DNA from: Lama guanicoe
Lineage: Eukaryota
NCBI GenBank assembly: GCA_013239625.1
Contig: MU057348.1
Span: 10,083,825 to 10,147,824 of the forward strand
Reading direction: 5' to 3'
DNA: 64,000 nucleotides
Shown one piece after another: positions 28,056 to 56,639 of the stretch. A model generated the notes under the pieces. That model did no database searches and was not told the DNA's origin. It saw only the letters and a list, made by a program, of their open reading frames with translations. The position numbers were made by a program, and so were the translations under genes. Position 1 is the stretch's first letter. Each line of letters starts with the position of its first letter.

Positions 28056-28056
28056 T

Positions 28057-28089: not shown

Positions 28090-28090
<1 letters not shown>

Positions 28091-31003: not shown

Positions 31004-31244
31004 ACATCGAAGATACAGCAGAGAAGGGAAGGGACGGATGAATGGAGAAAGGGAACCATAAAGTCGTGTTTACCAAGGAAAGGTTGTACTGGATGAGGAG
31101 AAATAAGGGGGATGGGGTACACTGGAGTGAATCAGACAAAGGAACTAAATTAGTTTTGAATTACATTTCAACTTAGACTCAAGGCATTGGTTAAACGTAA
31201 GAAATGGTGCATCTCTGGACAAAGCATCCCTGTAGCTTAAACTG

Positions 31245-33675: not shown

Positions 33676-33677
33676 GC

Positions 33678-33716
<39 letters not shown>

Positions 33717-33730
33717 ACACACACACACAA
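33676..33730 (+). repeat. Orphan poly(A)35 plus (CA)n, flanked by a 13 bp TSD-like direct repeat
   Basis: aaagagatacctg (33663-33675) and aaagagaaacctg (33731-33743). Confidence 0.7.
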
Positions 33731-36299: not shown

Positions 36300-38125
36300 T
36301 TCTTTCCACGATTTGGATTCTCCACCCTGTCATGACTGACACGTCTCTTTAGCAAGCTGTCTGTGACTTCTGCATCACCAAATCCACTGGCTTCTCCTTG
36401 AGTCACCTTCTGCAAGCTGCAGCATCCAGCACCTTCATTTACTGTTGCCTCCCATGGTTTCCATACCACCTTTTCTCTTGGCTCTTTGTCAGTCTTCTTG
36501 AATATTACTTCATAGCCTCCGTTGCTGGCTTGGTTCCTCTCTTAGTCCCCTGAAAGCAGAGGCTTACTCAAATTTCTTTTTGTCCCTCTCCTCTCCTTTT
36601 TCAAACTCTCCCTTGACAATGGACATTCATGGTCTCAGTGATGGCTCCGATAAAGAGGACTTCCAAATCTAAGACTCAAGCCCTGTTGTCTTTCCAGATC
36701 ACTTTGGACCTGGTCCTCTGGAACTGAGGGCAGGCTCCCTTTCACAAAGCAGGGAGCAGCCCTGGGTGGATGCTGAGAACCAACATGCGTCTGGTGAAAT
36801 AGACAAGGACAGAGGCAGAGTAGGGGACACAGCAGGAAGGTTGACTTTAGAGGGGCCAGTCAATCAGGATGCAAACTTGAAGGACTGGAGTAAAGATGGG
36901 AAGAGAGAGAGATGCAAAATACAGGCAGATTTGGTGTCAGTTCAAGGTTTCTCTCACAGACCCTGAGTTCTGACCATGGCACAGCTCTTCCATGGGTTAG
37001 TGCACCCTTTAGAGGATCGGGAATAACACATAGGTACTGATTTCCAGACCAGGTTTCCAGGAGGCCTTGCCACATCGCTGAGCCAGGACCTCCTTCCTCC
37101 TTCATGTTCACTTGGCATTTGTTCTCCAGAGTTCTGCACTTGGCTCTCCTCTTTTCATTTCCTATTTTGCTTTGCTGGGTGATCTCATCCACTCCCACAG
37201 CTTGGGATACTATTTTTAGGTTGATACCTCCCAAACATATATCTCCAGCCCAAAAATCCAGACCGGTAATACTACCTATATCTGCCAAAAAAAAAACCTT
37301 AAAATCAACATGTCCAAACAGAAGCCATTGTCATCTGCTCTCTCTGACTCTGTTTCTCTGCCTGTGCCCTCTCTCCTGGTAATGATACAACCAGCCACCC
37401 AGTCATTCAAACCAGAAACTGTAGAGTCCTCTTCGACTCCTCTTCTTTCCTTTATCCCTAAGTCAACTCTGCCTCTTAATCATTTGTTCACTTTTCACAC
37501 TTGTCCTTCTCCACCGCCGATTTCTTGGCTATCCCCCATCATCTCTCAGCTGGCTATTCCAGCAGTCTCTTGACCAGTCACTTGTGTCTAGTTTTACAAC
37601 CTCCCAATCGCCATGCCACTTGGTACTTTTCAAAGCAGGAAGTTGATGATCTTACTCCACGGTCCAATGACTCCTCACTGGTCGCCGCCAGATAAAATTT
37701 AAACACAATGCCTGGCACACAGTCTCTTTCCTGATTTGCCCTCTTCCTTCTAGGTTTATTTACAGGCATTTTCCAAGTAGTACCTCATGCTTCATCTACA
37801 TCTAGGGGCAATCTCCCAAATAGCCCTGCTGACTCCAATGCCAGACCTCTGTGCGTGCGTGTCTGCTGGCTGGCATGCCCTTTTCCTTCCGCGTGGTGAA
37901 TGCCAACTCATCCTTGAACACTTGGTTCTTGTATCAGCTTCTCTTTGAAGCCTTCTCTGACCTTTCCTTGTTTCTCTAAACTCTTGTGCCACCACTTCCC
38001 TGTACACAACTGTAAACCAGCACTTAATGGACTGAATTGTAATTTCTTGTTGACGCTTTTAACTTTCCCACTAAAATCAGAGCTCCTGGGTCGGGGGGTA
38101 CCCTGTCTCACGATTTCTTTCTTCT
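36300..38125 (+). mobile_element. Fragmented L2 (~36300-36700 and ~37090-38125)
   Basis: catcaccaaatccactggc...atatctccagccca...aaaatcaacatgtccaaac...tttgaagccttctctgacc...cagagctcctggg. Confidence 0.75.
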
Positions 38126-38619
38126 CTGAAGCTAGCCCAGGGCTTCTAAAGCTGTCTTCTTCAGAATTCTAGTCCCATGAGTTATTAAAAGGTATTCCTC
38201 ACACAGGCATCTATGGTTAAATACGTTTGGGGAAAGCAGCATGTTGACAATACACATGAGCTCAGGGAAGTCTCTCAGCAGAATCTGTTTGATCTGGTTT
38301 AACTCAGTCCCTCCAAACATCAGGGCAGGGGAAGACCCTTAAGCAGATCCTTATAACATGTGTGCAAGGGATAAAGGTAAAGATGTGCCCTGGGTGACCT
38401 GGAGAACAGAGAAGGGGCCGGCCCAGGCTTGAGCGGCTCTGGAAGCACATCTGGAGGAAGCGACCTCCATCTCTCACAAAAGGATAGTCACCAATTTAAC
38501 CCCTGAGAAGGAGATGCTGTGGTACCCTAATACTTCCAGAGACCGAACCTCAGATTGGAGGTGACCATCAGAAGTGTCTTTTTCTTTTTTTAAAGTGGAT
38601 GTACAGTTTTCTTCATTCA

Positions 38620-38929
38620 TTTTTTACTGAAGCCTAGCCAGTTTATAATGCGGTGTCAACATCTGGTGTACAGCATAATGTTTCAGTCATACATATACAT
38701 ACACATATTCATTATATTCTTTTTCATTATAGGTTACTACAAGATATTGAATACAGTTCCCAGTGCTATACAGTAGAAACTTGTTTATCTATTTTATATA
38801 TAGTAGTTAGTATCTGCAAATCTGGAACTCCCAATTTATCCCTTCCCACCCGTCCCCCAACCCCCAGTAACCGTAAGTGTGAGTCTGTTTCTGTTTTGTA
38901 AATAAGTTCATTTGTGTCTTTTTTTTTTC
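38620..38929 (-). mobile_element. Camelid/cetartiodactyl L1 3'UTR (older subfamily)
   Basis: Same family as 14876-15140 in reverse: ctggtgtacagcataatg...caagatattgaatacagttccc...gttttgtaaataagttcatttgtgtc. Confidence 0.9.
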
Positions 38930-39770
38930 AAAATGAGATCTTACCTCACACCAGTCAGAATGGCCATCATTAACAAGTCCACAGACAATAAATGTTGGAG
39001 ACAGTATGGAGAAAAGAGAACACTCCCACACTGTTGGTGGGAATTGGTGGTGGGGTTTGTTGTAGCCCTTATGGAAAACAGTATGGAGATTCCTCAAAAA
39101 ACTAAAAATAGACTTACCATATGATCCAGCAATCCTGCTGCTGGGCATATATCTGGAGAAAATTATAATTTAAAAAGATACATGCAGGCCAATGTTCACG
39201 GCAGCACTATTTACAACAGCCAAGACATGGAAACAACCTAAATGTCCACTGACAGGTGANNNNNNNNNNNNNNNNNNNNNNNNNNNNNNNNNNNNNNNNN
39301 NNNNNNNNNNNNNNNNNNNNNNNNNNNNNNNNNNNNNNNNNNNNNNNNNNNNNNNNNNNNNNNNNNNNNNNNNNNNNNNNNNNNNNNNNNNNNNNNNNNN
39401 NNNNNNNNNNNNNNNCTCATATGTAGAATCTAAAAAACAAAAACAAACAAACAAACTAAAACAAAGCACAAATGCAGGACAGAAATAGACTCATGGACAG
39501 AGAAGACAGACTTGTGGTTACCAGGGGGGTGGAGGGCGGGAAGGGATAGACTGGGATTTCCAAATTGTAGAATAGATAAACAAGATTACACTGTATAGCA
39601 CAGGGAAATATACACAAAATGTTATGATACCTCACAGAGAAAAAAATGTGACAATGAGTGTGTATATGTCCATGAATGACTGAAAAATTGTGCTGAACAC
39701 TGGAATTTGACACAACACTGTAAAATGATTATGAATCAATAAAAAAAGTAAAAAAAAAAAAAAAAAAAGA
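38930..39770 (+). mobile_element. L1 ORF2 C-terminus, 3'UTR and poly(A) of a different, probably younger subfamily
   Basis: Translates [22 protein letters not shown] and MFTAALFTTAKTWKQPKCP (L1 ORF2 end); aataaa and a long A tail at 39738-39770. Confidence 0.95.
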
Positions 39771-40359
39771 AAAGCAAGTCTTCCAGGACGTCCTTCTCTC
39801 ACGTCATCACTGTTGTCAGACTTAGCTTGGAAATGGCCTTCCCTGGGCTGAATCCCACCCCTAAATTCAACTCACTTCACACTTTTCAGCTGTTATCCTA
39901 CTGCTGTTTTTATGTTCCTGTGTATGTCCTAGTGGCCTTTAATCACGATACTTCAGGCTTTCTGAGGGTAGGTGCTGGTCATTTACGCAGTTCTCCCGTA
40001 GACACTGGAAGTCCCAAACATACAGTGGGCTCCTGGTACGTGTTTATTGAATGCAGTAAACACGAGCATAATTTAATATCTGAGACGTAAAAGTTGCAAA
40101 TGTGATGACACAGCACCTGAGCTTGGGAACTTGGAGACCTTGGGGGGCATTTTCGGCAACTGCTAAGGCCGGGGGAATAGACCCTTTTTATACTGTTTTG
40201 CCTAGAAGAAAATGAATTCACTAGTTCCTATTTAACTCCCAGGCCCATGCAGGGGAGGAGGGGCAGAATAGCATCTCTGACTTGGATATCCAGCACAGTC
40301 TCCCAAAAAGAACAAGCATTTTAAAAGACATGGGCTGTATTTCCAGCTTTGCACAGAGG

Positions 40360-40610
40360 CAGCACCACATAGGGGTTTAGGACCAGGGCTGTGGTCAGTG
40401 CATGGACTGCCGTCCTGGCTTTGCCACTTGCTGTTCTATGACTCTGGGCAAATTACTTGACCTCTCTGGGTATTTTCTCATCTGTAATATGTGGATGACA
40501 ATTCTAGGACCTACCTTCTAGGATTTTTATGAGGACTGAATGAGTTACAATTTATGGTGAATTTAGAAGAGTGCCTAGCTTGTAACAAATGCAATTTAAG
40601 TGTTTGTAAG
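40360..40610 (+). mobile_element. MIR SINE
   Basis: tcctggctttgccacttgct...ctgggcaaattacttgacctctctg...ctcatctgtaa. Confidence 0.85.
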
Positions 40611-42438
40611 ATCAATCAATCAATATCAGTTTCCATGTTGAGGCAGATCCAGGATGAGACAGTGAAGTCTCATTTTGCCAGATAGTGCAAATTATCTGTA
40701 CTTCCAGCACCCACTGTTTTAAAATAGTAATAAAAACTAGTGCTTCTACTCTCTATTCTACAAACAACCTATGAAGTGGGTACTATTTTCATGTTTTAGA
40801 GAGAAAACAGGCTCAGAGGGTACGGTGCTGAATGCTGTAATGCTGAATGTCCGTGTTAGGTGATGGAGCCAGGCTTCACACTCCTGTCTGTCCCACTCCC
40901 AAGCTCAAACCTTTCTCATCAAGTGATAACTTTCTCTCATGGGGGATGTTTGGGTTAGAGGCAACCCATTACTTCCCATGACTTACTAGTCAGGAAGTAA
41001 TTTAGAAACTTCTTTAATTACACAACACAGGTCATATCCCATCTGGATGTTTCGAACTAATTAGTAGTTTTAATAGAAAAGTTCAACTTGCACATGACAC
41101 TTTTTTCCCACACACACTACAATGCAAGGCAAGCTTCTTTCCTCGTTCACCCTCAACATCCCCACCAGTTCCATTCTCCAAAGTCTTAAATATCACTTCA
41201 AAAAAAAGTATTCATTTGTAAGCATCTTCTTTATAATATAAAGAAATGAGACCATACTTCATAGACAGATGTCTTCCTATTTGTAGACCCTTATTCTAGA
41301 GTGAGTGAAACAGAGGATCAGTGAGCTACAGTCGACTCATAACTCATCTTGATCATTGAATGTGAGAACAGGGGCCCCCAGAGAGGAACCTACCTATCCC
41401 TCTCCATTTGATAGATCAGGAAAGCAATGCCTAGAGAGAGTAAGGAACTTTCTGTAGATCCCACAGCAAGCCAGTGGCAGAATCAGGAATGTCAGAAGAC
41501 AGGCAGAGTCAGGTGCATGGGGTTAGGGGCAGTAGTACAGATAACAAGTGTTGCCAACTTGAAACTGACTCGAAGGTGATCATGATGAAAGCAACAAAGT
41601 TTTTCAACCTGCCACTCAGGACATGGGATTGCACATCAGTTCTGCCTCTGTCTCTCAAGAGGATGCTGCTATCAGGAATAACCTATGCATGTATAAACAT
41701 TTTTTAAAAACATACACATGAGATCATACTTTCATGGTGATCCAGGCTTCATTGCTTACATCCCCAATGTACAGATGAGGAAAAGGAGGCACAGGGCATG
41801 ACTCAGCAGCTTACCACAAGAATCTCCTGGACACCTGCCTGGGCTTCTGTCAGATGCATTTGGGTGAATTTCTATTCGGCATTCTTACTGAGGTCTTATT
41901 GTTAAGAACACGTTCTTTGGGTTTCCTGCTTATCTCTAAGCTGGAGAAAATGTGCATGTTCTTTTTGTTCTTTTTTTCTGTTTGCTTTTTCAACCTTCAG
42001 CTTCCATGACGTTAAAAAAAAAAAAAAAGTAAGCTGAGCCAGTCTAGTCTAAAAGCAGCCTGTTTGCAATGTGATATGGGACCTGGACTGCAAACAGCTA
42101 AACCCCGGTGTAGGGTTCTCTAAACACATTTCAACAATTTTTTCCAAGTGCCAATTGGTTTATTTCCACTGAAATACTTCAAGATGATAAAATAACAGTA
42201 CATTTCCTACTCTACTGAATGAGTGATGGTAAAATGGTACTTACATATATCAGAAGGGAAAATAGAAAGCTAATGGATTTTTTTTTTTTACATTGAAGCG
42301 TAGGCATCCTTTAACATTCCTTGTATTTAGCCAAAGGCATTTTAAAGGTTAGAACTGGTTAAGGCAAAAGTCTTATAGTCCATAGTTTTTGTTAAGGTTG
42401 ATATTTGGTAGACCAGATAACTTCTAACCCTGTAACAT

Positions 42439-42721
42439 CACCTTCTGCTTTAAAATTATTGATTCTCCATAAAAATAAAGTCATCTGCTCCCTAAACCTG
42501 GAAAAGCTGGTGAATATGTGAACCAATTCTAGAAAGTGTCTCTGAGTTGTTTTTTGTTTGTTTCAGAGTTTACTGTGTATATGCAAAAAAATATATATAT
42601 TGTATGATCCATTGTTTTGCCAAAAGCCCTTAATTCCCTTTGTCAGTGTAGGCATAATGAGTGATCTTTCTATATGAGAATATCACAGAAAAGCACAGAT
42701 AAAATGATGGTCTCTTCCAAG
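42439..42721 (+). repeat. Unique-sequence donor of the duplicate at ~43513-43777
   Basis: Hand alignment gives about 25 substitutions and a few 1-2 bp indels over ~250 bp (~87-90%); offset ~1056 bp. Confidence 0.95.
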
Positions 42722-43489
42722 CCTAAATGCTAGAATTATGTGATTTAAATTGTGGCATCAGATCTAATCTCATCGGCTTTGGAAATTGCTCCCTCTCATC
42801 CTCTCTAACCTCCTTCTCCTCTTTCATCTGTGGAGGGAGAGTGAGGTAGGTAAATACGACTAATATTATGCGAGTGGAAGGAAATGCAGTATAACTTTTA
42901 AGGTCCTACTTTAATACCTATGACTAATGAAACATTAATTATAGTGCTACATAAATCTTGAGGAGATTTCAAAGCTAAGTCTGCTCTTCTTTTCATTCCA
43001 TTGACTTATCATCCAGGAGTCCCACCCTATCCAGGATAGCTCCTTCTTATTGGCTATCCTCAACAGTCCAATCCAAATATAACTCTTTAGTCCTTCAAAA
43101 GTGGCATTCACGTCCCCTCCCAGTCCTTCTCCATGCTCTCCATGTTTCATTCCATGAACCCCGAAGTTCAACCAACATCTTCCCTCTTCCTGAAGAATCT
43201 GCAAGTTTTCCCACCTCCTGGTTGCCTAACGTTCATTGCTCCCTTAATCCAGGGCCTTAGTATGACCAGCTGAAGTCTCTCCCACCACCCTCTTCTGACC
43301 CACAGTCACACCAGTATGACCACCTTTAAGGTTCTTCTTGCTGCATTGACCAAAATCCCCATCTCCGTCAATGTCTTCACTAACACAGCCATACTTGCCT
43401 TCCTTTGCCAACACTTAATTACAAAAGTCATGCCCTCCCAATCATCACCAAGTTCTTCACCAGAGCTTTCGGCTGCCTTATCTCTAAAA

Positions 43490-43953
43490 TATGTCAACCA
43501 GGGGTGATTTTGCACCCCCTTACTTTAAAAATAAATTCATTTCCTCCCTAAACCCGGAAAAGCTGGTGGATATGTGAACCAACTTTGGGAAGTGTTTCTG
43601 AGTTGTTTTTTGTTTGTTTCAAAGAGTTTACTGTACATATACAAAAATATATATATTATATGATCCATCGTTTTGCCAAAGGCCATAATTCCCTTTGTCA
43701 GGTAAACATAATGAGTGATCTTTCTTTATGAGGATATCATAAAAAAAGCACAGATAAAATGATGGTCTTTTCCCAAGACATTTGACAATGTGTGGAGCTA
43801 TTTTTCTGGTTGTCACAACTTGGGGATGGGAGTGCTATTGGCACTTAGTGGGTAAAGGGATGCTTCTAAACATCCCACAACGCCCAGGACAGCCCCTCAC
43901 AGCAAAGAAGTGTCTAGTCTCAGATGTCAATGAGCCGAGGTCGACAATCCCTG
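43490..43953 (+). mobile_element. MER20 interrupted by a ~260 bp locally templated insertion (~43520-43776)
   Basis: tcaaccaggggtgattttgcacccc [insert] gacatttgacaatgtgtggag...tggttgtcacaact...caggacagcccc...gccgaggtcgacaatccctg gives a complete MER20 once the insert is removed. Confidence 0.9.
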
Positions 43954-46029
43954 CTCTAGGAGAGAGTGGACGCCTTTATTCTCTTTTGGTGCCTTTGGCA
44001 AAAAACCAAAACAAAACAAAGTCTGTCCTCCAGGGACACACCTGGAGCTCGCTGTTCTCTTCCCCACTTCTCAGCTCAGGACTGGAGAGAACAAGTGGGA
44101 CCTTGGAGAACTAGCCTCTCCGCTCCCTACGTGGCCTCTTCTCCCTCCTGAGCAGGGGCTGGGACAGAGGGACTCCATCTGGGCAGAAGAACCCATTCAC
44201 ACCAACGGCTTTCAACCCAGGCTACATAACACATGCGTGTCATTTCAAATATTTTACATATTTAGAATACGGATACTCAGAATTCAAACTGAATTGGTCT
44301 GGGATGGGGTCTGAGTGATATTTTTTAAAACCCCCCAGACAATACCAATGTGCAGCCAGAGCTAATAACCCCCTGGGCTGGGAGCCTGGTCCTCGCGGGG
44401 AGAACAGACCTACCCAAAGAGCTGTGGGAAATGACTCTCCCCAGGCCCTTTAACACTATGGAACAGCAGGAGGGAAGTCTTTCAATTGTGTGGTCAGCCT
44501 TGGTCATCTGGGCAAATGTAGATTATCTGAGCGTCTTTGTTCAGAGTCTTTCTGTAACTCAAGCAGGGGCTTACTCTAATTTTTAACATTTATCAAAATC
44601 AGGAACAGAGGGTAAATCAAAGCTTAAAAGCTATCTTCATAATTAAGCACTATCTGCTAGCTATTTATTTGTCTTGGGGGAAAATACGCCTTTTCCCTCT
44701 TGCAGAAAAATAAAATAATCCTAAATTAAAGCTCTGAGATGGATTACAACTTGCGAAAAACAATGGGATAGTATCATAAATCACAAACCTTGCCTCTATG
44801 AAATATGACCAGTCTCATTCTGTACATTTCCTCCCCATTTCAAAACAATGGAGTCTTTACAAGGCAAATTAATCTGGCATTAACCTTGGGATCATTATTG
44901 TGCTCTCACTGATGAAACCGGTAACATAAAAATACTTCTCAATGCTCAAGAATCTCATTAAATAATCTGTAACTTAAGTCAATTCTATCTAATTTCAGTT
45001 TCTTTTCTTATTCTTCTGTAGCCACACAGTCAGCATTCTAGAGAAGAAGCAACATTGGACCCCAAGCTGAGAAGCCTGGAGTTCATGCTATGGTACCACT
45101 TTAGCAAGTCACTTTCTCTAGACTGTTCCCTCATCAGTAAAGTGATGGTGTCACCAGGTGATATGCCAATCCTTTCCAAGTTTAGGAATTAGGAGAAGGC
45201 ACATGACTAGTTTGGCAACTTTAAATAACCATGTGGTGCCTGGTTTTCTGCCTTGGCATATAGTGTGGGAATGTGTTATATATCAATCAGCAAGCATTTA
45301 CTGAGCACACTCAATACAAAAAATACAGGGCATTGTTATGGAAAAATCAAAGAAATAGATATTATTATACCTCTAAGGTTTTAATATCAATAAGGTTATA
45401 ATTTGGTTGGAGAGATACAGTTACATCAGATAAAAACATTTCAAAATGCCAATTGGTATTTCATTAAATCAGTGATCGTTGATTGGAAACCGATTGTAGA
45501 GTTAGATCCTAACCTAATGAATATCACAGATAACAGAGCTGATACGTTTAGGGAAAGATGCAAACTTTTCTTCCTTTGTTATAAACTGCAGTAACGCACT
45601 GCATTAACACGTCAGTTAGTGGCGTGGTGTTATCTTCGATCTCAAGTATCTTTCAAGTACCTAACTTACTACTGTGGAAATAACATCTGTTCCTCCTATT
45701 TCTGGGTAATTCTGAAAATTCTTTCCCTATCATCTGCTCCTACAGCTGAGATGATCACCTCTTCCGGGTTCCACTGAATGTTCCTAAGTTGAGAGCTGAT
45801 GGTCATCAATAATTTGGTAGCTAATTTAATTAAATATGCAGTAATTGAGTACTTAGTAGGCTATGTGCTTCTCAAGCATTGTGTTAAATGCTGGCAATAC
45901 AGAGAGAACCTATTATTTGTAACTTGCCTATGTAGTTCATAGTCAAGCAGGGAAAAGTACGTGGAATAATTAAACTTGGTACACTGTGATAAATGTACAA
46001 TAAGGTCTGTTCAGTGTTTGGAGGTAGCT

Positions 46030-46790
46030 CATTAATTCATTTATTTAACAAATATGTATTTAGTGTTTATTTCTTCTGGTTACTATCCAAGGGATGTAGC
46101 ATACGTTGGCAGAAAAAACAGACTCGGTCCCTAACCTTATGGAGCTTGAAGCTTAATGGAAGAATGGACAAGCAACAAGTGAATGAACAAAAAACAAAAT
46201 CAGCATGTAATTTCCAAAAATATTCATTTCTATAAAAGAAACAAAGAGTACAGTGATAATGAAAGGGGTGAACCTATACTCTTGAAGTGGTCCTTGAAAT
46301 GTTTTCTCAGACATCTCAGCTGAGACCCAAAGAACAGAAGGGCCTTCATGCGGAGAGCAGAGGTGAGATCCCCGGGGCCAGCAGGCACAGTATGGGCTAA
46401 GGCTCAGAGACAGAAATGCGAGTGGTGAGTCGGGGGAACTAAGTCAGCTGTGTGGTTAAAGAGGAGGGTGATGGGGATGAGGCTGGAGGCAGACCACACA
46501 GGGCTTTATGGCCCACCATATAGAATCTCATGTAAAGCTCAACGAGAAGCCATTGATGGTGCGAATCCATTCAGGTTTTTGCAAATAACTCTGGATGCTG
46601 AATGGACACTGGCCTGGAGTGGGACATTCGTGGGTCTGGGCAGACCACATAGGAAGTTGAGGTGACTGGGCTGGTGGCTGTGGGAATGCAAGAAAAGGAA
46701 AAGAAAAAAGAAGCCTGGATTTGAGGTTTCTTTTGGAGAAAGAAGCAATAGGACTGTGATGGATATGGAGAGAGCCAGGGGAAGAGAAAG
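46030..46790 (-). mobile_element. L2 LINE fragment
   Basis: ttcatttatttaacaaatatgtatttagtg...atggagctt...ctgagacccaaagaa...aagccattga...ataactctggatgc. Confidence 0.8.
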
Positions 46791-47134
46791 TCCATGTGAT
46801 GGTGTCAGGGAGGACACTTCACACACATGCCCGGAGCTTGGGAAGGGCTGGGGACTAAAGCCTCTGGCAATTGCATGGTGCCAAAGGATAGAACAGATTA
46901 AGTCAGTCAGAGAACTAAACAGAGAAGGAGCCCTGTGCTGAGTAATTCCAACTGTCACGGGAGCAGAACAGTGTGCTTGACTCAAGGTCCCTGAATCAGT
47001 TTTACATCCCCAGAGTGGAGAAAGGAACATGGTGGGAATGCATCAGTCAGGGCATGGCCCTGACCGTTTTCTGTTTCCAGAAGCAGAAGAATTAGAAAAT
47101 AAAAAGCTCCTTGATACATAGGACAGGAAGTGGG

Positions 47135-47293
47135 GGAGAGCCCCTGAAAGTCACTAAGGAAGTGCAAGCTTCTGCTCCCGCATGAGCACCCCTTACAAGC
47201 CCTGGATATAATTTTGTATTTGTAATTTGGTAGTTTTTTTCCTGATCGGGCCCCCAAAAAACATAAGCTCAGGCCTCACAAAATCTGCCCCTG
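47135..47293 (-). mobile_element. MER96-like hAT fossil
   Basis: aattttgtatttgtaattt...gggcccccaaaaaacataagctcaggcctcacaaaatctgcccctg, reverse of the terminus seen at 1961. Confidence 0.65.
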
Positions 47294-47370
47294 GTGGGGA
47301 CAATTAATGAACAGAACCTGAAATAAAAAACCCCAATGACTTGATAATTTGGTTCCTGATGGGGGCTTTT

Positions 47371-48175
47371 CTGTCGTTGTTGTTATTGAAGTATAGTTGG
47401 TTTATAAAGTTGTGTTAATTTCTGGTGTACAGCATAGTGATTCAGTTATACATATGTACACATATTCCTTTTCATATTCTTTTTCATTATAGGCTATTAC
47501 AAGATATTGAATATAGTTCCCTGTGCTATACATTAGGACCTTGTTGTTTATCTATTTTATATATAGTAGTGTGTATCTGCAAACCCTGAACTCCTAATTT
47601 ACCCCTCCATTCTCTCCTCTTTCGCTCCCGGGTAACCACAAGTTTGTTTTCTGTGTCTGTAAGTCTGTTTCTGTTTTGTAAATAAGTTCATTTGTGTCAT
47701 TTTTTAGATTCCGCATACAAGTGATAGCATATGGTATTTTTCTTTCTCTTTCTGGCTTACTTCACTTAGTATAGCAATCTCCANNNNNNNNNNNNNNNNN
47801 NNNNNNNNNNNNNNNNNNNNNNNNNNNNNNNNNNNNNNNNNNNNNNNNNNNNNNNNNNNNNNNNNNNNNNNNNNNNNNNNNNNNNNNNNNNNNNNNNNNN
47901 NNNNNNNNNNNNNNNNNNNNNNNNNNNNNNNNNNNNNNNNNNNNNNNNNNNNNNNNNNNNNNNNNNNCTTCTTTATCCAGTCACCTGTCAGTAGACATTT
48001 ATGTCTTGGCTATTGTAAATAGTGCTGCTATGAACATTAGGGTGCAGGTATCTTTTCACATTAGTTTCCTCCAGGTATATGCCTAGAGTGGGATTGCTGG
48101 ACCATATGATGTCTATTTTTAGATTTTTAAGGAATCTCCATACTGTTTTCCATAATAGCTGCACCAAATTACATT
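47371..48175 (-). mobile_element. 5'-truncated camelid/cetartiodactyl L1 with a 15 bp TSD
   Basis: ttattgaagtatagttggtttataaagttgtg... through ORF2-end sequence. TSD ctgatgggggctttt (47356-47370) and ctgatggggcctttt (48176-48190). Confidence 0.95.
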
Positions 48176-48498
48176 CTGATGGGGCCTTTTGATACTACTT
48201 CAGTGCTGAGTCAGCTAGAAGTTATGGGCAGATCCCTTAGGAAAAGCTTTCTTGTTCAGAGCTACTCCCTGACCTGTGTGCATGTGCCTCAACCAGAATC
48301 ATGGTGACAACGCTGTGCAGGAGAAAGGTGAGGCCGAGGTCAAGGTTGGGGAAACAGATTTCAGCCATGGGCAGCACCGTGACTGCCAGAACACCTTGCG
48401 GGCAACTGACGAACATACCAACCCTGCCAATCAAGGGAACATCTGGTTCTGCAAACCCAACAAGTTTGAAAAAGAGGAGGAAGAACAAAAAGGACAGG

Positions 48499-48678
48499 CA
48501 GACTGGATACATAATCTGTAGAACCCAGTGCAAAATGGAAATGTGGGTGGGCTTCCTGTCCAAAAGGTATTAAGAATTTCAAATGAATGGCAGCAGAGCA
48601 TAAAGCCAAGAGCAGGGGCTATTGTAAGCAGGGGCCCTATTTGGCTCCAGAGGTCGTGTGTCCATGAAGTCAGTCCTG
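48499..48678 (-). mobile_element. MER45A (hAT-Tip100), full length
   Basis: cagactggatacataatctgtagaacccagtgcaaaatggaaatgtgg...attaagaatttcaa...cagcagagcataaagccaag...ccatgaagtcagtcctg. Confidence 0.82.
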
Positions 48679-50679
48679 AGAATGGGGGAAAACTTAGAGA
48701 TTTGTACACATTTATTGGGCATGGATCGTATTCCAGACACAGGGCAGGACGTTCACAATTTGTTTTATTTTTGTAACAATGCTATGAGCGAAAGCCCACC
48801 AACATTCCACAGATGAAAAAGAGTCTCCAAAAGGTTACGTTATTTGCACAACCACACACAGGTAGCCTCTTTGTGCGTGCTGAAGGGGAGGGAGAAAAGA
48901 CACCAGAAGTCAATGCCCAAGTATTGGTCAGAACCAGGAACACATGGGCTTCTATTATTCCATTCACTTAACAAAGCCAAGATGTCAAAATGGCTTGATT
49001 ACCATTCTTGTGAAGGACAAGTGAGGCAGCGAACAGGGAACTGAAAACACAATTGTCCTTTACCATTTCCTTGACCTATTTAGCTTTGTACCACTGCAGG
49101 GAGGCTGTCATTCCAACAAAAGCAGACACCTTTGGAAGCTTCTGGACTTTTGGTTTTTGTATTTAGCTATTCTGGTTGGCAGAGGGTTAAATGACTACTG
49201 CTTTATTTGCAAATTATTTATATTAAAAGTGAAATGTCAAGTTCACACAGGGTGAAATAAAGGACTCTTTATAAACATGCAAACAAACGCAAGTGTCCAC
49301 TGCCAAAAATATCCAAACAAACCAAACCGGAGACAAGAAATAGCTCCTCAGCTCAAAGGGTACCGCCCTGCCACATGACCTCTTCAATAGATGAAAGGAA
49401 ATCCTCAAATTCAAGACCAAACTCAATCAAATATTAATTTAACGTTGTCTCTTGGTAGATACCAAGTTAAAGGAGATTTGCTACGTGTCCAGCTAACAGG
49501 AGCACTGTGGACACCTGCATTACAAAATGAGGCAAAAACAATCCAGTGAGGAACTGGGATTTCTAACATTTTGCCAGCAGTCTTCGGTAGCCTGTACACT
49601 CTCCTATCGTCACTCATGCTTGTCTATTTACACACGCTTATAAAGCATCATTAAGATTCCTTTTATAGAAAAGAGTGAAAACATACACTCACGTGGTTAT
49701 ACATGAACTTCAAACATAGGTGTTCTTAGCTTTTACAACATTTTAGCAAGGAGTAACTTTAAAACCTGTGCAGTCCTGAATCCCAGAGATGACACATGTG
49801 TGATTTGTAAAGTACATGTGGATCTGACATGACTATCACCAAGGAGACAGGGCCTCACACCAACACAAGGAGCTGGAGCCGAGCCTGGAATATGCCTGGG
49901 CCAACTCTGTGGCCCTTGAAACTGGTGAAACGGGTTTGGTATTTACTTTGATCTAAATTGTGAAACTCAGGGCTTCCACTGAGAGGAGAGTTTATAGGAT
50001 CGCAGTTCTGGTACCTCTTCTGAGAAGAGAGGAAATGGACATTAGCATCTTCCTAAAAGAAAGTAACAGGGAAGCCTACAAATTCGATCGTTCTACGTAA
50101 GGAAGCAGCCCCCCATCGGTAGATAAACGGCAGGCATAACATGTTTGGTGAACTCACAGGTCTGGTCTTCAACAAGGAGTTTAGGTTATTCTTACAGCCT
50201 GGTCAGTAACTGAGATATGTTTTGGCCTGCTTCGTGAATAAGACACAACTGAAATCTTGTTCCTAATTCCAGAGGTAGGGGAGACTCTGCATCTCTGAAG
50301 CAAATAGCACAACATGTAAACAAAGCCCAGTACTTATTCCAGCAAATCTGGGATCAATTTATTAGCATATTAGCATATACAGCCCCTACCGGAAGGAAAT
50401 CACTGGAAGAACAATATCTATTGATCTTGCAAAAAAGGAAGCTACAATATTCTTCTTGTATCTGTTTAGTAGCATGTCACTACTCATGTTATGCAGGGGC
50501 CCAGTGCTCAGAGCAGGTGGCTTCTGCTGTTGTGATAAAGTGCACAGAGGCCAGAGCCAGGCAGCTGGTTCAAATCTCATCTCCATTAGGCTCTGACTTT
50601 GCTAACCTCTCAGCATCAGTTTCCTCATCTGTAAAATGAGGATATTAATAGCATCCTCTGAAGGCACTGCTATTTCCTA

Positions 50680-51490
50680 CATAGTATCTCTGCTCCCTTT
50701 CTTCCTTAAAACAGAACCATGATTCTGTTCAGTTTTGTGGTATTTCCAATTAGAACACTCATTTTCCAGACCTTGATAAAGTGGGGGTGGCTGTTCTGAT
50801 ACATGAATGAAGGCAGATGTCATCGGGTGGTGCTGCCCTGATGGAGACAGATTCAACCAGTACAGGCTTTGGCTCTTCACATCCCCCTTCTTCCTGCCTG
50901 GAATGTGCACTGGTACCCAGAGATGGAGCCACCACTGAGAACTGAAGTCACATCTGAAAGGTGAATGAACAAGTAGGATTAAGAAGCCTTGCTCCTTGAC
51001 CAGCTGCACATATCCAGGATTGCCTGTCCCCGAGTNNNNNNNNNNNNNNNNNNNNNNNNNNNNNNNNNNNNNNNNNNNNNNNNNNNNNNNNNNNNNNNNN
51101 NNNNNNNNNNNNNNNNNNNNNNNNNNNNNNNNNNNNNNNNNNNNNNNNNNNNNNNNNNNNNNNNNNNNNNNNNNNNNNNNNNNNNNNNNNNNNNNNNNNN
51201 NNNNNNNNNNNNNNNNNNNNNNNNNNNNNNNNNNNNNNNNNNNNNNNNNNNNNNNNNNNNNNNNNNNNNNNNNNNNNNNNNNNNNNNNNNNNNNNNNNNN
51301 NNNNNNNNNNNNNNNNNNNNNNNGGAGTAAGAGGAGGGGAGGGGGNNNNNNNNNNNNNNNNAAGAGGAGGAGGAGGGGAGGAGGATGAAAAAGAGGAGGA
51401 GGAGGGGGGAGGGGAGGTGGATGGGAGAGAAGGAAGCCATCACCTGCTAAGTTAAGTCACATTAGCCAAATGCAACCCTAACTGATATAT
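50680..51490 (+). mobile_element. MLT1-type LTR interrupted by an N run and a GGA-rich tract; MIR at ~50530-50660 just upstream
   Basis: catttttccagaccttg...cttcttcctgcctggaatgtg...aagaagccttgctccttga...agccaaatgcaaccctaactgatat. Confidence 0.7.
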
Positions 51491-53204
51491 TACCTAACAA
51501 GATTGGAGAAGAATTTTTAAGAGTGAAGTTCTCACCATGGAGCCAGGAACAAAGACTTTAGAATAGTGATGTACACTGAACTACCTATGGGAAGATACTA
51601 TTAGCAGGGTAACACTGGGGCCATCCTCAGCTGTAGAGGAATAATTCCCTGCTAAGGTGGGTATCGTACTCCACCTGAATTAGGTGACTTGCCCTTTTGG
51701 CAGCATCATTCCTCCCATGACCTCAGGGAAGCCGGTGGTGTGCTGCTTCCTCAGCAGGTGCAGAGCTCCTGTCATTTATCCTGCCCCTTAACTGCCTCCA
51801 GGAGTAGCGGTACACTCAATGTCATTCCAAGACTGGTGGATCCAGTATGATTTTGAATCTCATTAAAAACTCTTGTCTGTTTTCTTTTAATTGCACCTCA
51901 TAGGGTATGCTAATTAAAACTCTTAGAAGAACCAGATGTGGTACCTGGCACAGGCTCATGGCCCAGGAATTGGTCTAAAAATCTAATTTAATGACTAATG
52001 TTTCCCCTCATAATTTCCACACCTCAAGAGTCAAGAAAGGCAGCTTCCTAGGAAAGGAGAGAGCCTTCTAGCACCAGCAGTACCCAAATTGTGATGGTAG
52101 CACCTCGAAGACCCCACAAATGTAATGTATGTAATGAACATGGGATGGCCTTGTCCTTCCTGGTCTCCCATCAGTTTCGAGGTGACAAAAGAAGCATTTA
52201 CAACTTGAATAAAATTTATTTTGTCATTCATATTAGTTTGGTTCACAGTGATTTTCTCTCTTTCCAGGTGAAAATCTATTTCTCCACATTTGAGTTTGAT
52301 CTCCTTTTCTTTTTTTAACTACCTCATTGAGGCATAATTTTATGAGGTATAAGCTTTACTAAGATGGCACACAGTAAACTGCACGGGTTTCAGGTGTACA
52401 ATTTTGATAAGTTACGACAAATGTAAACACCCATGAAACCATCACTAAAAGTCAAGATAATGGACATATAAGCATCACACTCAAAAGTTTTCTTGTGCCC
52501 CTTTGCAACCCTCCCCTCTTGCTCCTTCTCATTGTCTCCTAACTCCCATCACAAGCACCTACTGATCTACTTTCTGTCACTGTCGATTAGTTTGCATTTT
52601 CTATGGTTTTAAATAAATGGAATCAAGTAGTATGTACTCATCTTTTGATCTGGGTTTCTGCACTCAGCAAAACTATTTAGAAATTCATTCATATTTTGCC
52701 TGTATAAACAATCCATTTTCTTTCATTGCTGAGGAGTATTCCAGTGTATGGATATACCACAGTGTGTTCATCCATTCAACTGCTGATGGGTATTTGAGTT
52801 GTTTCTGACTTTCGCCTACTACAGAAAAGCTGCTAGGAACATTGTGTACAGGTCTTCGTACGGACATAGGCTGTCACTTCTCTTGGATAAATACCTTCGG
52901 CACTGTTCGTNNNNNNNNNNNNNNNNNNNNNNNNNNNNNNNNNNNNNNNNNNNNNNNNNNNNNNNNNNNNNNNNNNNNNNNNNNNNNNNNNNNNNNNNNN
53001 NNNNNNNNNNNNNNNNNNNNNNNNNNNNNNNNNNNNNNNNNNNNNNNNNNNNNNNNNNNNNNNNNNNNNNNNNNNNNNNNNNNNNNNNNNNNNNNNNNNN
53101 NNNNNNNNNNNNNNNNNNNNNNNNNNNNNNNNNNNNNNNNNNNNNNNNNNNNNNNNNNNNNNNNNNNNNNNNNNNNNNNNNNNNNNNNNNNNNNNNNNNN
53201 NNNN

Positions 53205-53700
53205 GAAAGAAGGAGGTCCCGTCATTTATGACAACATGGATGGACCTTGAAGGCAGTATGCTAAGTGAAATAAGTCAGACAGAGAAAGATAAACACTGTA
53301 TGAGATCACTTACACGTGGAATCTGAAAAAGCCGAACTCATGGCTACAGAGAGTAGGCTGGTGGTTACCAGGGGCTGAAAGGTAAGGAAAACAGGGAGAT
53401 ATTGGTCAAAGGTACAAACTTTCAGTTGTAAGATGAATAAGTTCTGGAAATTTAATGAATAACACAGTGATTATAGTTAACAATACTGTATTATATACTT
53501 GAAAAGTTGTGATAAGAGTAAATCTTACATGCTCTCATCACACAAAAAAAAAGAATTAGTAATTATGTGTTCGCTAACGCTATGGTGATAAACATTTTGC
53601 AACGTACAAGTATATTAATCAACATGTTAAGTGTATCAAATCCACACCATAAACTTACACAATTATATGTCCATTGTATCTCAATAAAGTGAAAAACAAT
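53205..53700 (+). mobile_element. L1MA9-like 3' end nested in the older L1 (5' part hidden by N at 52911-53204)
   Basis: acaacatggatggaccttgaaggcagtatgctaagtgaaataagtcagacagagaaag...ggtcaaaggtacaaactttcagtt...tatctcaataaag. Confidence 0.88.
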
Positions 53701-54301
53701 ACAATTTTTAAAAATGGAAGAAGAAGAAACTGCCAGTCTGTTTTCCAAAGCGGTTGTACTACTTTGCATGCCCAGGAGCAATGTATGAGGGTTCCAGTTC
53801 CCTTTTTTCCTTCGTGCAGATTCATATTTTCACCTGGCATCCTTTTCCTTCTGCCTGAAGGACTTCTGTTAACACTTTTTGTGATGAAGCTCTGTCTGCT
53901 GGTGATGTATTCTTTCAACTTTTCTATGTCTGAAAGCCTTTATTTCATCTTTGTTTTAGAAAGACAGTTTTGCTCTTGACAGCTTCAGGATTTTAAGGTA
54001 TTGTTCCACTGACTTCTTGCTTACATTTTTTTCTAAAGAATTTGCTGCCATCCTTTTTTTGTTGGGGGTGTTTTTTGTTTTGGTTTTGGTTTGGTTTTGT
54101 TTTGTTTTGTTTTGTTTTTTACTGACTGCTTTTAGGATGTTCTCAGTGTCTCTGGTTTAGAGTAATTTGATTATAATGTGCCTTACTGTGATTTTCCTCA
54201 TTATTTTTGTGCTGGGAGTTCATTGAGTTTTTGGATCTGTGAGTTTACAAGTTTTCATTAAATCTGGGCATTTTTTGGCCATCATTTCTACAAATTTTTT
54301 C

Positions 54302-54804
54302 TGTATGAGTTATTCATTGCTGTGTAACAAATAACTCCAAAATTTTGCAGCTGAAAACAATACACACTTATTATCTACGCTTTCCGTGGGTCAGGACTCT
54401 AGGGATGGCTTAGTTGGATGCCTCTAGCCGTGAAGCTCTCATGCAGTTGCAGTCAAGGGACTCTGGCAGATGTCAGAAGATCTGATTCCACGTTCACTCA
54501 TATGCTTGTTAGCAGTCTAAGTTCCCTGCCAGGCAGGCCTCTCTCCAAGGCTGCCTCATAATGTGGCATCTGGCTTCTCCAGAGAAAAGACATCTAAGAG
54601 AGTGAGAGAGAGAACTTCCAAGATAGAATCCAGAATCTTCTTGTAATCTAAGTTTGTAATTCATATCCCATCACTTCTGCCATATTTCCTTTGTAAGAAG
54701 TGAGTCAATAAATTGACCCCACACTCAATAGGTAGGGATTAAAGAAGATCAAGAATGTCAGGAGGCAAGGATCACTGGGGGCCATCCTAGAGGCTGCCTA
54801 CTAT
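54302..54804 (-). mobile_element. MLT1F-like solo LTR nested in L1 ORF1
   Basis: tgtatgagttattcattgctgtgtaacaaataactccaaa...ggatcactgggggccatcctagaggctgcctac. Confidence 0.85.
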
Positions 54805-56057
54805 TCCCACTTCTCCTTTGGGAATCCCAATTACACATTTATTAGGCCACTTGAAGTTGTCGCAGCTCAGTGATGTTCTGTTTTGTTTGTTTTTTAATTC
54901 ACTTTTCTCTCTGTACTTCATTTTGGATCACTTCTCTTGCTCTGTCTTCATGTTTACAAATCTCTTCTTCTAAGATGTCCAATCAGCCATTAATGCAATC
55001 CAGTGCATTTTTCATCTTGGACATTGCACTTTTCATCTTTAAAGATTCAATTTGGGTCTTTATTATATCTTCTATATCTCTACCTAACTTTTCAAACATA
55101 GAGAATAGAGTTCTGTTAACAGTTTTCATGTCCTTTGCTGCTAATTCTAACATCTGTGTCAATTCTGGGTCAGTTCTGATTGGCTGCTTTTTCTCCTCAT
55201 GGTTTCCCACTTCTTGGTACTTTTTTATTACGTACTACACATTGTGAATTTTACCTGGTTGGATCCTGGAATTTTTGTATTTCTATAAACATTTTTAGCT
55301 TGTTTGGTGACAGAGTTAAGCTACTTGAAAAGAGTTTGATCCTTTTGGATATGTTTTTAAGATTTGTTAGGTGGTAACAGAGCAGTGTTCAGTGTTCAAT
55401 AATTAAGGCTAATTCCTCCCTAATACTGAGGCAAGACTCATCTGTGCATGTCACTCTGTTTCCCATAAATCGTGATGATGTTCAGTCTAAAATGTAAGAA
55501 TAAGTGTTATTTCTGGCCTTATATGGGAGCTGAACATTGTCCCCTCTTACCCTCCTGGGTGGTTCTTCCTCTGGCCTCCAGTAGTTCCTCACGTGCCTGA
55601 ACTTATCAGCTGAACACTTACTAAAGGGAGCATCCTTGCTGGGGTTTTCTCTCTGTGGGTCTCTCCCTCCTCTCTAGTGATCTGCTCTGAGAGCTGCAGC
55701 TGCCTTGGTCTCCTCCACGTCTCAGCTCTATCACCTCAATGCAGAGTGTTCTCTGGATTTCTCTTCCCTGCACCACGGCCTGTAAATTATCTCAAAGCAG
55801 TGAGCTGGAATGACTACAGGACTCAGTTTTTTATACTGTCTCAGACAGATCACTATCCTTTGTTGTCTGATATCCAGTATCTTGAACACCATTGCTTCAC
55901 ATACTTTTTAGGGTTTTGGTTGTTTCAAGAGAGAGAGTCATTGTGGTCCCTGTTACTCCATCTTGGTGGAAGCAGAAGTCTGGTCTCCAGGCCAAACATG
56001 TCGAGTGGACATCAGCAACCTTGCTGAAGCAGCATGCCAATGTTTAGTCTCTCCTTT

Positions 56058-56483
56058 CTTTCTTTTTTCTTCCTTTCTTCCTTCCTTCCTTCCTTCCTTC
56101 CTTCTTTCCTTCCTCCCTTCCTTCCTTCCTTTCTTTAAAATGTATTTTTATTGAAGTATAGTCAGTTTACAATGTTGTGTCAATCACTGGTGTACAGCAC
56201 AATACTTCAGTCATATAGGAACATACATATATTTGTTTTCATATTCTTTTGCACCATAAGTTACTACAAGATATTGAATATAGTTCCCTGTGCTATACAG
56301 TATGAACTTGTTGTTTATCGGATTCTGTGAGAATCCTCCTGCATCTCCAAAAGGAGAGACGCTCTGCCAGAGCCCAGCAGGAGCCCTGCGTGACCCAGCG
56401 GGTCCATAGGTGCAACTCTTGGTGCACCTGTGGGAGAGAGAGAGCCGTGGGTCTCTCCACTCCGCCATCTTGGCCCAACACCC
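56058..56483 (-). mobile_element. Bipartite mini-L1: 5'UTR start (56483-56319) fused to the distal 3'UTR (56318-~56140) and a (GGAA)n-decayed tail
   Basis: Minus strand: gggtgttgggccaagatggcggag (YY1 motif typical of an L1 5' end)...cacagaatccg|ataaacaacaagttcatactgtatagcacaggg...cttcaataaaaa. TSD tagtctctccttt (56045-56057) and taccctctccttt (56484-56496). Confidence 0.85.
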
Positions 56484-56639
56484 TACCCTCTCCTTTATAG
56501 TGGATAGGGATCAAGGAGAAACCCTGGTGTGTATGGAGACAGGTCAGGGGAGAAGGAAAGGAAGGATAATTTACTTCTTTTCCACGTTTAGAAGCTGCTT
56601 TTCACAACCCCATCCACATATGATTTCTCTAAAACCCAT

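What the first reader, a model, noticed from the sequence alone, without database searches (positions are those of the whole stretch)
56045..56496. Retrotransposed, apparently spliced ORF-less mini-L1 (5'UTR joined to 3'UTR): candidate undescribed SINE-like family
Seen: on the minus strand, one insertion with a 13 bp TSD (11/13 identical) begins at an L1-type 5' terminus (ggg...ccaAGATGGCGg, YY1 site), runs 165 nt, then jumps to the last ~180 nt of the L1 3'UTR at ...cacagaatccG|ATAAACAACAAG, followed by a polyA signal and tail. Another L1 copy in this window (minus strand, 38812 to 38781) reads TACTAAC-tactatatataaaatAG|ATAAACAAG at that position: a perfect branch-point heptamer with its A 19 nt upstream of an AG that coincides with the junction. 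TACTAAC is also at 14934-14940 and the AG at 47552-47553. Established: spliced L1 retrocopies (SpIREs) are known in primates, with 5'UTR-internal and 5'UTR/ORF1 splices, and 5'+3' bipartite non-autonomous elements are known mainly from RTE LINEs (Bov-A). Inference: one splice removed both ORFs, so the RNA had to be mobilised in trans. It keeps the start of the internal promoter and the polyA signal, so it could have amplified as a Pol II SINE-like family. I cannot see the donor GT because no intact 5'UTR is in the window; from memory, laurasiatherian L1 5'UTRs have a GGTAGG at about this position.
Basis: partly seen in the sequence, partly recalled or inferred. Interest (0 to 1): 0.88.

Follow-up and report, generated by a model that had tools for sequence, protein, structure and literature searches.

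The report
ORF-less mini-L1 retrocopy, probably spliced
A roughly 345-base retrotransposed copy of an L1 element that keeps only the start of the 5'UTR and the end of the 3'UTR; splicing probably removed both genes, but the splice donor could not be checked and no close sister copies were seen.

Summary
The structure is real. After about 165-169 nt comes a sharp junction, ..AATCCG|ATAAAC. Then follow about 180 nt of L1 3'UTR, AATAAA and an A-tail that has become a (GGAA)n repeat. More than 1,100 genome contigs show that L1 reads ..AAAATAG immediately before ATAAAC, so the junction sits on an AG. It is the first AG after a branch-like site, but the pyrimidine tract is poor.

Over the core of the 5' part, depth in a whole-genome contig set equals that of the unique flank. 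There are therefore no close sister copies and no young SINE-like family. CpG decay could hide older kin.

The locus is also present in a relative about 2.5% diverged. An RNA-library contig there includes upstream flank, so it is not an own-promoter transcript.

The scan has flagged at least five other mini-L1s of the same size (328-365 bp) on other DNA of this genome. I could not read them; they suggest a recurrent product.

Verdict: a probable 5'UTR-to-3'UTR SpIRE-like retrocopy.

The parts
56488..56496 (-). It is preceded by ..CTAT, giving a TAT|AAAG L1-endonuclease-like target.
   Evidence: 9-nt exact match; 8/2000 shuffles reach it
56319..56487 (-). 5' part: L1-type 5' terminus (the start is ambiguous between 56487 and 56483). 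GC 0.61, 6 CpG. The G at 56319 is shared with the L1 3'UTR (1-nt ambiguity).
   Evidence: In one search only 56420-56497 attracts other contigs (about 10-36 copy-equivalents), and their variant letters give GCTCACC. One search finds a weak 39-nt match to the 5' end of the older L1 next door. One search gives the composition.
56462..56473 (-). YY1-box-like CCAAGATGGCGG, 16 nt from the element's start
   Evidence: this is the bin with the most relatives (depth 371 against 10.2)
56318..56319 (-). Junction, ..AATCCG|ATAAAC. In L1 copies the sequence before ATAAAC is ..TATATAAAATAG.
   Evidence: In one search, 1141 contigs of X1 (804 in X21, 308 in X15) end at 56319 with loose ends reading ..ACTACTATATATAAAATA.
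56137..56318 (-). 3' part: the last ~180 nt of an abundant L1 3'UTR, with AATAAA at 56152..56147
   Evidence: 82-84% identity to three window copies; word depth 0.7-4.5 million
56058..56136 (-). A-rich tail that has become a (GGAA)n/(GAAA)n microsatellite
   Evidence: TRF, period 4/8/12, 56054-56136
56049..56057 (-).
56211..56468 (-). Incidental 85-codon ORF from the YY1-box ATG across the junction. It has no relatives and is not claimed as a gene.

Best explanation
This is a retrocopy of an L1 RNA from which one splice removed everything between about nt 165 of the 5'UTR and a cryptic acceptor about 180 nt before the poly(A) site. In effect it is a 5'UTR-to-3'UTR SpIRE. The resulting ~345-nt polyadenylated RNA encodes neither ORF1p nor ORF2p, so L1 proteins supplied in trans copied it by target-primed reverse transcription at a TAT|AAAG site. 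That produced the 9-13 bp duplication. The tail later became a (GGAA)n microsatellite. This copy is an old, fixed, dead-end product, not a recent member of an amplifying family. Shown here: the architecture, the insertion hallmarks, the AG in the L1 consensus at the junction, and the absence of close sister copies. Inferred: that the junction was made by the spliceosome, and that mobilisation was in trans.
For: The TSD, the endonuclease-like target, AATAAA and the tail bracket exactly the two L1 ends. Homology to L1 3'UTRs starts precisely at (G)ATAAAC. In two whole-genome contig sets and one RNA-library contig set, over 1,100, 800 and 300 contigs respectively continue upstream as ..ACTACTATATATAAAATA+G. 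The deleted segment therefore ends in AG. AG makes up only 4.6-7.1% of dinucleotides in these L1 3' regions. No other AG lies between the branch-like TAC(T/A)AAC and this AG, which is about 18-19 nt downstream. The 5' end is a complete L1 terminus with a YY1 box, as expected for a full-length RNA and not a truncated cDNA. Spliced L1 retrocopies are an established class: 131 are known in human, and some depend on proteins supplied in trans (PMC5860796). At least five other first-stage notes describe the same architecture at 328-365 bp in this genome. They are unverified. A narrow size range is what a fixed donor-acceptor pair predicts.
Against: The donor is unread. No full-length L1 5'UTR of this genome could be reached, so GT after ..AATCCG rests only on recollection. 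The acceptor is weak: 7 of 15 bases between branch site and AG are pyrimidines, and the run just before AG is AAAAT. The genome-wide majority at the branch site is TACAAAC, not TACTAAC. The shared G gives 1-nt microhomology, which also fits a template jump or end joining. The core of the 5' part (56368-56419) attracted no other contig, not even a full-length L1. Its L1 origin beyond the first ~70-85 nt is therefore not demonstrated. No junction RNA reads were seen. X24 laid only 3 reads, and the X15 contig includes 119 nt of upstream flank.
Confidence: 0.5

Rival explanations
1. The internal deletion was not made by splicing. One route is that the L1 reverse transcriptase jumped from the 3'UTR to the 5'UTR, on the same or another L1 RNA, during TPRT. 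The other is that a full-length insertion later lost about 6 kb by end joining. On this view the AG is coincidence.
For: There is 1-nt microhomology (G at 56319) at the junction. The acceptor context is weak and the consensus branch site is non-canonical. The donor is unverified. No close sister copies were seen. Chance of an AG is about 5-7%, up to about twice that once the ambiguous G is allowed for. That is small but not negligible across the many L1 insertions in a genome.
Against: The breakpoint lies exactly on the first AG after a branch-like site. At least five other notes describe mini-L1s of nearly the same length in this genome. Random jumps or deletions would not give that, if the notes hold. 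Known template-switch chimeras usually join at the 3' end of the second RNA, not at an internal site (established knowledge of U6/L1 chimeras; for context).
Confidence: 0.25
2. This is one copy of a self-propagating, Pol II-transcribed, SINE-like mini-L1 family. A founder, made by splicing or deletion, kept enough promoter and the poly(A) signal to be transcribed and was repeatedly mobilised in trans.
For: The element retains the YY1 box, the first ~165 nt of the 5'UTR and AATAAA. A TTTT run at 56352 argues against Pol III, not against Pol II. At least five other same-sized mini-L1 notes exist in 588 scanned windows of this genome. CpG decay in the GC-rich 5' part (6 CpG left, o/e 0.39) could push old sister copies below the 80% mapping threshold.
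Against: In the whole-genome contig set X1, depth over 56368-56393 is 10.2, identical to the unique flank. It is 16.9 over 56394-56419. The same mapping laid 13,050 pieces at under 90% likeness, so copies 85% alike or closer should have appeared. In human, spliced 5'UTRs lose most promoter activity and SpIREs are dead ends (PMC5860796). The RNA-library contig over the locus starts upstream of the element.
Confidence: 0.2
3. The 5' part is not L1. It is the first exon of a cellular gene with a YY1-type start (AAGATGGCGG), spliced into an intronic L1 acceptor, polyadenylated at the L1 signal, and retrotransposed as a chimeric processed pseudogene.
For: The 5' part is single-copy over its core. 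The frame is open for 50 codons from the YY1-box ATG to the junction. AAGATGGCGG is also a common motif at cellular transcription and translation starts (established knowledge).
Against: The 50-residue peptide has no hit at E<=0.001 among 1.84 billion representative proteins and no Pfam match. No parental second copy shows in the contigs. The first ~65 nt have L1-5'-end-like relatives (36 copy-equivalents, variant GCTCACC). They also resemble the 5' end of the older L1 next door (weak).
Confidence: 0.04

Closest known systems
SpIREs (spliced integrated retrotransposed elements) of human L1: SpIRE97/622, 97/790 and 97/976 (Larson et al. 2018, PMC5860796)
   Same: An L1 retrocopy with an interstitial deletion bounded by splice-site-like sequence. 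It has a complete 5' terminus, a TSD and a poly(A) tail. It was probably a dead end on arrival. The 97/976 class needs ORF1p supplied in trans.
   Different: Known SpIREs splice within the 5'UTR or into ORF1 and keep ORF2, so they are about 5.5 kb long. Here the acceptor lies in the 3'UTR and both ORFs are gone (~345 nt), so both proteins must come in trans. The host is a non-primate. The donor was not verified.
Short internally deleted LINE derivatives (SIDE type): Bov-A from Bov-B/RTE, RIME and NARTc of trypanosomes, TRE5-A deletion derivatives of Dictyostelium (PMC3159450 appeared; the rest is from established knowledge)
   Same: The 5' end and 3' end of the parent LINE are joined, the element has no coding capacity, and it is mobilised in trans by the parent's machinery.
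   Different: Those are demonstrated multi-copy families. Here no close sister copy was seen. The parent is a mammalian L1, whose strong cis preference makes such families unexpected.
HAL1 (half-L1) non-autonomous elements
   Same: A non-autonomous element derived from L1.
   Different: HAL1 keeps ORF1. This element has no ORF1 sequence at all.
Chimeric retrocopies made by L1 RT template switching (U6/L1 and related; 10.1101/2025.02.02.635956)
   Same: A bipartite insertion inside one TSD, with a 5'-truncated L1 3' end as the 3' half.
   Different: The 5' half here is the 5' fragment of an L1 RNA joined at an internal site. It is not a complete small RNA joined at its 3' end. The L1 breakpoint sits on an AG.

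Membership tests
SpIRE (spliced L1 retrocopy) | The deleted segment ends in AG (splice acceptor) in the unspliced L1 | tested here: met
   L1 copies read ..AAAATAG|ATAAAC. This holds for 2 of the 3 window copies that carry this stretch, and for a fourth, divergent copy (c39), which also has TAG before ATAAAC. It also holds for the consensus of 1141, 804 and 308 contig loose ends. The acceptor context is weak: a poor pyrimidine tract, and a majority branch site of TACAAAC.
SpIRE (spliced L1 retrocopy) | The deleted segment begins with GT (splice donor) in the unspliced L1 5'UTR | not testable with these tools
   The window holds no full-length 5'UTR of this L1 lineage.
SpIRE (spliced L1 retrocopy) | L1 insertion hallmarks: TSD, endonuclease-type target, poly(A) signal and tail, complete 5' terminus | tested here: met
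SpIRE (spliced L1 retrocopy) | The same junction recurs in independent insertions | tested here: inconclusive
   No other contig was laid over the core of the 5' part. However, at least five unverified first-stage notes describe mini-L1s of 328-365 bp elsewhere in this genome.
SpIRE (spliced L1 retrocopy) | The spliced RNA isoform is detectable | tested here: inconclusive
   The raw RNA reads of X24 gave 3 reads, none at the junction. The X15 contig across the junction also covers 119 nt of upstream flank, so it is read-through RNA or DNA.
SINE-like / SIDE-type non-autonomous family | Many copies that share both ends and the junction, each with its own TSD | tested here: not met
   This was tested for close relatives only. 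Depth over 56368-56393 equals the single-copy flank in X1 (10.2), and X21 has none. Kin older than about 15-20% divergence would be missed.
SINE-like / SIDE-type non-autonomous family | The element's own promoter drives transcription | not tested
   Only the YY1 box and ~165 nt are retained. The one RNA-library contig starts upstream of the element.
HAL1 | Retains L1 ORF1 | tested here: not met
   There is no ORF1 sequence; the element is 5'UTR plus 3'UTR only.
Template-switch chimeric retrocopy | The 5' partner is a complete RNA joined at its 3' end, and the junction is unrelated to splice signals | tested here: not met
   The 5' partner ends at an internal L1 5'UTR position (inferred), and the L1 breakpoint coincides with AG. 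Rfam finds no small RNA.

The most novel reading that the evidence does not exclude
In this mammal, a fixed donor in the L1 5'UTR (~nt 165) and a cryptic acceptor in the 3'UTR repeatedly produce a ~340-nt ORF-less L1 RNA. That RNA is mobilised in trans despite L1's cis preference and has left tens to hundreds of copies. Some of those copies may themselves be transcribed from the retained promoter start. This would be a Pol II SINE-like, SIDE-type family derived from a mammalian L1, which has not been described.
Probability: 0.2. Interest if true: 0.75.

Novelty: new variant of a known kind. Interest (0 to 1): 0.5.

Why it matters
L1 proteins strongly prefer the RNA that encoded them. An RNA with neither ORF that still integrated is therefore a natural record of trans-mobilisation. 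If the junction recurs, it would show that L1 carries a donor-acceptor pair able to delete its whole coding region. That would be a potential self-limiting or host-exploited weakness. It would also show the minimal L1 sequence (about 165 nt of 5' end plus about 180 nt of 3' end with the tail) that suffices for retrotransposition in vivo. As a single copy it is an ordinary curiosity of the L1 fossil record.

Tried and rejected
- **Second copy or full-length 5'UTR in the window.** None was found. blastn at word size 9 and 7 gave only a weak 39-nt match to the 5' end of the older L1 next door. A strict local alignment was not above shuffles (27 against a maximum of 26).
- **L1 copies in the window.** All copies of this lineage are 5'-truncated.
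- **Exact-pattern scans.** The near-junction 21-mer and the YY1-box 24-mer gave 0 hits in metagenome contigs and genome contigs. An L1 3'UTR 23-mer gave 0 hits in viral contigs. These collections evidently hold no DNA of this host, so the blanks say nothing.
- **The search for homologous proteins with the junction-spanning ORF.** Residues 1-50 and residues 46-85 both returned no candidates. The second region is encoded by a hugely abundant L1 3' end, so the database does not hold such ORFs. Both blanks are uninformative on copy number.
- **Other searches.** The 50-aa peptide against 1.84 billion representatives gave 0 hits. Pfam and Rfam found nothing.
- **Full-text search for four diagnostic strings.** No paper holds any of them. 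Belancio 2006 and 2008 are not held in the library.
- **Readings rejected.** Pol III SINE: there is no tRNA, 7SL or 5S head, and an internal TTTT is present. HAL1: there is no ORF1. Twin-priming inversion: both halves are co-linear.
- **Dfam and Repbase.** Neither could be consulted.

Full report
**What is there**

Read on the minus strand, the stretch 56496..45 is a single insertion. The 9-nt sequence AAAGGAGAG occurs at 56496..56488 and again at 56057..56049. A shared 9-mer is reached by 8 of 2000 shuffles of the upstream flank. The target reads ..CTAT|AAAGG, close to the L1 endonuclease preference TT|AAAA (established knowledge).

The insert has these parts:
- It begins GGTAGGGTGTTGGGCCAAGATGGCGG. 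The YY1-type box lies at 56473..56462, 16 nt from the start.
- It runs to ..CTCACAGAATCCG at 56319.
- It continues from 56318 as ATAAACAACAAG.. for about 180 nt.
- AATAAA lies at 56152..56147.
- An A-rich tail follows, now a (GGAA)n/(GAAA)n microsatellite (TRF, 56054-56136).

The two halves differ sharply in composition. The 5' part has GC 0.61, 6 CpG and o/e 0.39. The 3' part has GC 0.30 and no CpG.

**The 3' half is L1 3'UTR, and its breakpoint sits on an AG**

blastn of the element against the window finds four other L1 3' ends: 47552-47380(-), 14958-15135(+), 38785-38621(-) and 39579-39745(+). Identities are 82.3, 83.5, 81.5 and 73.8%. Every match starts at element position 178-185, which is the junction. 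Nothing in the window matches the first 177 nt.

The upstream context of those copies is ..GCAGATAC(T/A)(A/C)ACTACTATATATAAAATAG|ATAAAC. Copy c14 has AA in place of AG.

I laid the contigs of a whole-genome run (X1), a second genome (X21) and an RNA library (X15) on 55900-56650 at 80% likeness. Word depth over the 3' half is 0.7-4.5 million. In X1, 1141 contigs stop matching at 56319; the figures are 804 for X21 and 308 for X15. Their loose ends, reverse-complemented, read ..CAGATACAAACTACTATATATAAAATA. The L1 consensus therefore has AG directly before ATAAAC.

The G at 56319 is common to both partners, so the junction has 1 nt of ambiguity.

AG makes up 4.6-7.1% of dinucleotides in these L1 3' regions. 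The coincidence is therefore worth roughly a ten-fold likelihood ratio for splicing.

The AG is the first one downstream of the branch-like heptamer, about 18-19 nt from its A. Against this:
- the heptamer is TACTAAC in only two window copies, and TACAAAC in the genome-wide majority;
- the intervening 15 nt contain only 7 pyrimidines and end in AAAAT.

This is a weak acceptor.

**The 5' half: how much is shown to be L1**

The terminus and the YY1 box are typical of L1. In one search the bins 56420-56497 attract other contigs. Depths in X1 are 106, 371 and 55 against 10.2 for single copy, or up to about 36 copy-equivalents. Their majority letters change GCTCTCT to GCTCACC.

A relaxed blastn aligns element nt 18-56 to the 5' terminus of the older L1 that starts about 70 bp downstream (55966-55928; 69% identity, E 0.5). 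That is weak, but the position is apt.

Beyond about nt 70-85, nothing else in the genome contigs is laid. Depth is 16.9 over 56394-56419 and 10.2 over 56368-56393, the same as the unique flank 56498-56650. It rises to 85 over 56342-56367.

The same mapping laid 13,050 pieces at under 90% likeness, so relatives at 85% or more should have appeared. Two readings fit. Either methylated CpG-rich 5'UTRs of this age have decayed below 80% pairwise identity, or this 5'UTR type is rare. I cannot tell which, and I flag it as unexplained.

I also tested the rival that the 5' half is a cellular first exon. The frame is open for 50 codons from the YY1-box ATG. The peptide has no hit among 1.84 billion representative proteins and no Pfam match. 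Rfam finds no RNA family.

**The donor could not be read**

All L1 copies of this lineage in the window are 5'-truncated. The routes to a full-length 5'UTR all failed:
- Exact-pattern scans of the metagenome, prokaryote-genome and viral collections returned nothing. These collections hold no DNA of this host.
- The protein database does not hold ORFs from such repeats. Even the part encoded by the hyper-abundant L1 3' end finds no candidate, so the blank for the 5' part means nothing.
- No paper holds the diagnostic strings.

That is recollection, not a test.

**Family or one-off**

The depth result excludes a young family of close copies. It also means that no contig other than the locus's own was laid across the whole element. 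Two contigs (X15 record 15 and X21 record 24) align from 56170 to 56351, crossing the junction by 32 nt. They show about 14% mismatch and 6 gaps. They could be a diverged second copy or an L1 3'UTR deletion variant; I could not read them.

At 56320, 2,479 depth units extend one base or more past the junction, about 0.5% of the L1 depth. Random L1 variants can explain that.

On the other hand, the scan's own notebook lists at least five other first-stage findings in this genome with the same architecture and nearly the same length:
- s1-856526: 365 letters, 'probable GT-AG';
- s1-856790: 328 nt;
- s1-859697: 337 bp;
- s1-859720: 344 bp;
- s1-861207: about 350 bp.

It also lists an ORF1-only element with a 'splice-like AG' (s1-861169). 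The element here measures about 345 nt from its 5' end to the poly(A) site. These are unchecked AI notes on DNA I could not read.

If they hold, a narrow size range is what a fixed donor-acceptor pair predicts and what random template jumps or deletions do not. They raised my odds for splicing. They do not distinguish repeated splicing from amplification of a master copy.

**Age and expression**

Fourteen DNA runs under four organism labels, from at least six studies, hold 0.81-0.91 of the sampled words of the locus. One of them may be the source of the assembly.

A 322-nt contig from an RNA library (X15) covers 56295-56615 with 8 differences and one inserted base, about 2.5%. It includes the junction and 119 nt of upstream flank. 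The insertion is therefore shared with a relative about 2.5% diverged and is old. Differences are spread equally over element and flank, so nothing points to constraint.

That contig is not a transcript from the element's own promoter; it is read-through RNA or contaminating DNA. Raw RNA reads of another organism (X24) gave 3 reads and no junction read.

**Comparison with what is known**

Spliced L1 retrocopies (SpIREs) are established in human. There are 116 SpIRE97/622, 4 SpIRE97/790 and 11 SpIRE97/976. All splice within the 5'UTR or into ORF1, and they are generally dead ends. The ORF1-disrupted class depends on ORF1p in trans (PMC5860796; commentary PMC5860798). None of the classes found in that work removes both ORFs.

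In function, the closest analogues are the short internally deleted derivatives of other LINE clades (Bov-A, RIME/NARTc, TRE5-A derivatives). These are true families.

The present element meets the SpIRE criteria that I could test: the AG, the insertion hallmarks and the complete 5' end. The donor criterion remains open. It fails the family criterion for close relatives. I file it as a probable new variant of a known kind and not as a new kind.

**Verdict**

| Explanation | Confidence |
|---|---|
| 5'UTR-to-3'UTR spliced L1 RNA retrotransposed in trans; this copy is a dead end | 0.5 |
| Non-splice deletion or template jump | 0.25 |
| Member of a self-propagating mini-L1 family | 0.2 |
| Cellular exon chimera | 0.04 |

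Interest is 0.5. As a lone copy the element is modest. It becomes clearly worthwhile if the other mini-L1 notes prove to share the junction.

Noticed in passing
window 54900-55975 (-): An older L1 lies about 70 bp downstream of the mini-L1 on the same strand. It has its own 5' terminus (..CACCAAGATGGAGTAACAGGGACC..), a 5'UTR and decayed ORF1 remnants, including an 83-codon open stretch at 54986-55234. The mini-L1's TSD does not include it, so the two insertions are independent.
   Followed up: partly
window 38621-38785 (-) and 39579-39745 (+): Two L1 3' ends face each other about 800 bp apart, with a masked N run (39260-39415) between them. They could be two separate insertions or an inversion-type L1 structure.
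   Followed up: no
window 56404-56433 (-): There is a 30-nt near-palindrome inside the 5' part, CCACAGGTGCA-CCAAGAGT-TGCACCTATGG, with an 11-bp stem carrying one mismatch. Its significance is unknown.
   Followed up: no
window 56446-56471, read-laying table 2: Relative to the single-copy locus contig, L1 5'-end (YY1-box) sequence is somewhat more abundant in the RNA-library contigs (243 against 4.4) than in the genome contigs (371 against 10.2). This hints that L1 5' ends are expressed in that tissue. Contig depth is a poor measure, however.
   Followed up: no
window 56342-56367: A short stretch just 5' of the junction has about 8 copy-equivalents in X1, about 6.5 times the locus contig's depth in X15, and a depth of 15.8 in X21, which lacks the locus. 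The adjacent 56368-56393 has none. Two non-orthologous contigs (X15 record 15, X21 record 24) cross the junction up to 56351. These may be diverged sister copies; I could not read them.
   Followed up: partly
window N runs, e.g. 47784-47967, 39260-39415, 51036-51323, 52911-53204, 58664-60100: Twelve masked N runs total 2,419 bases. Several lie inside L1 bodies.
   Followed up: no
method note: the search for homologous proteins returns no candidate even for the peptide encoded by the very abundant L1 3' end. ORFs from mammalian repeats are therefore not in that database, and its blanks carry no weight for repeat copy number.
   Followed up: yes
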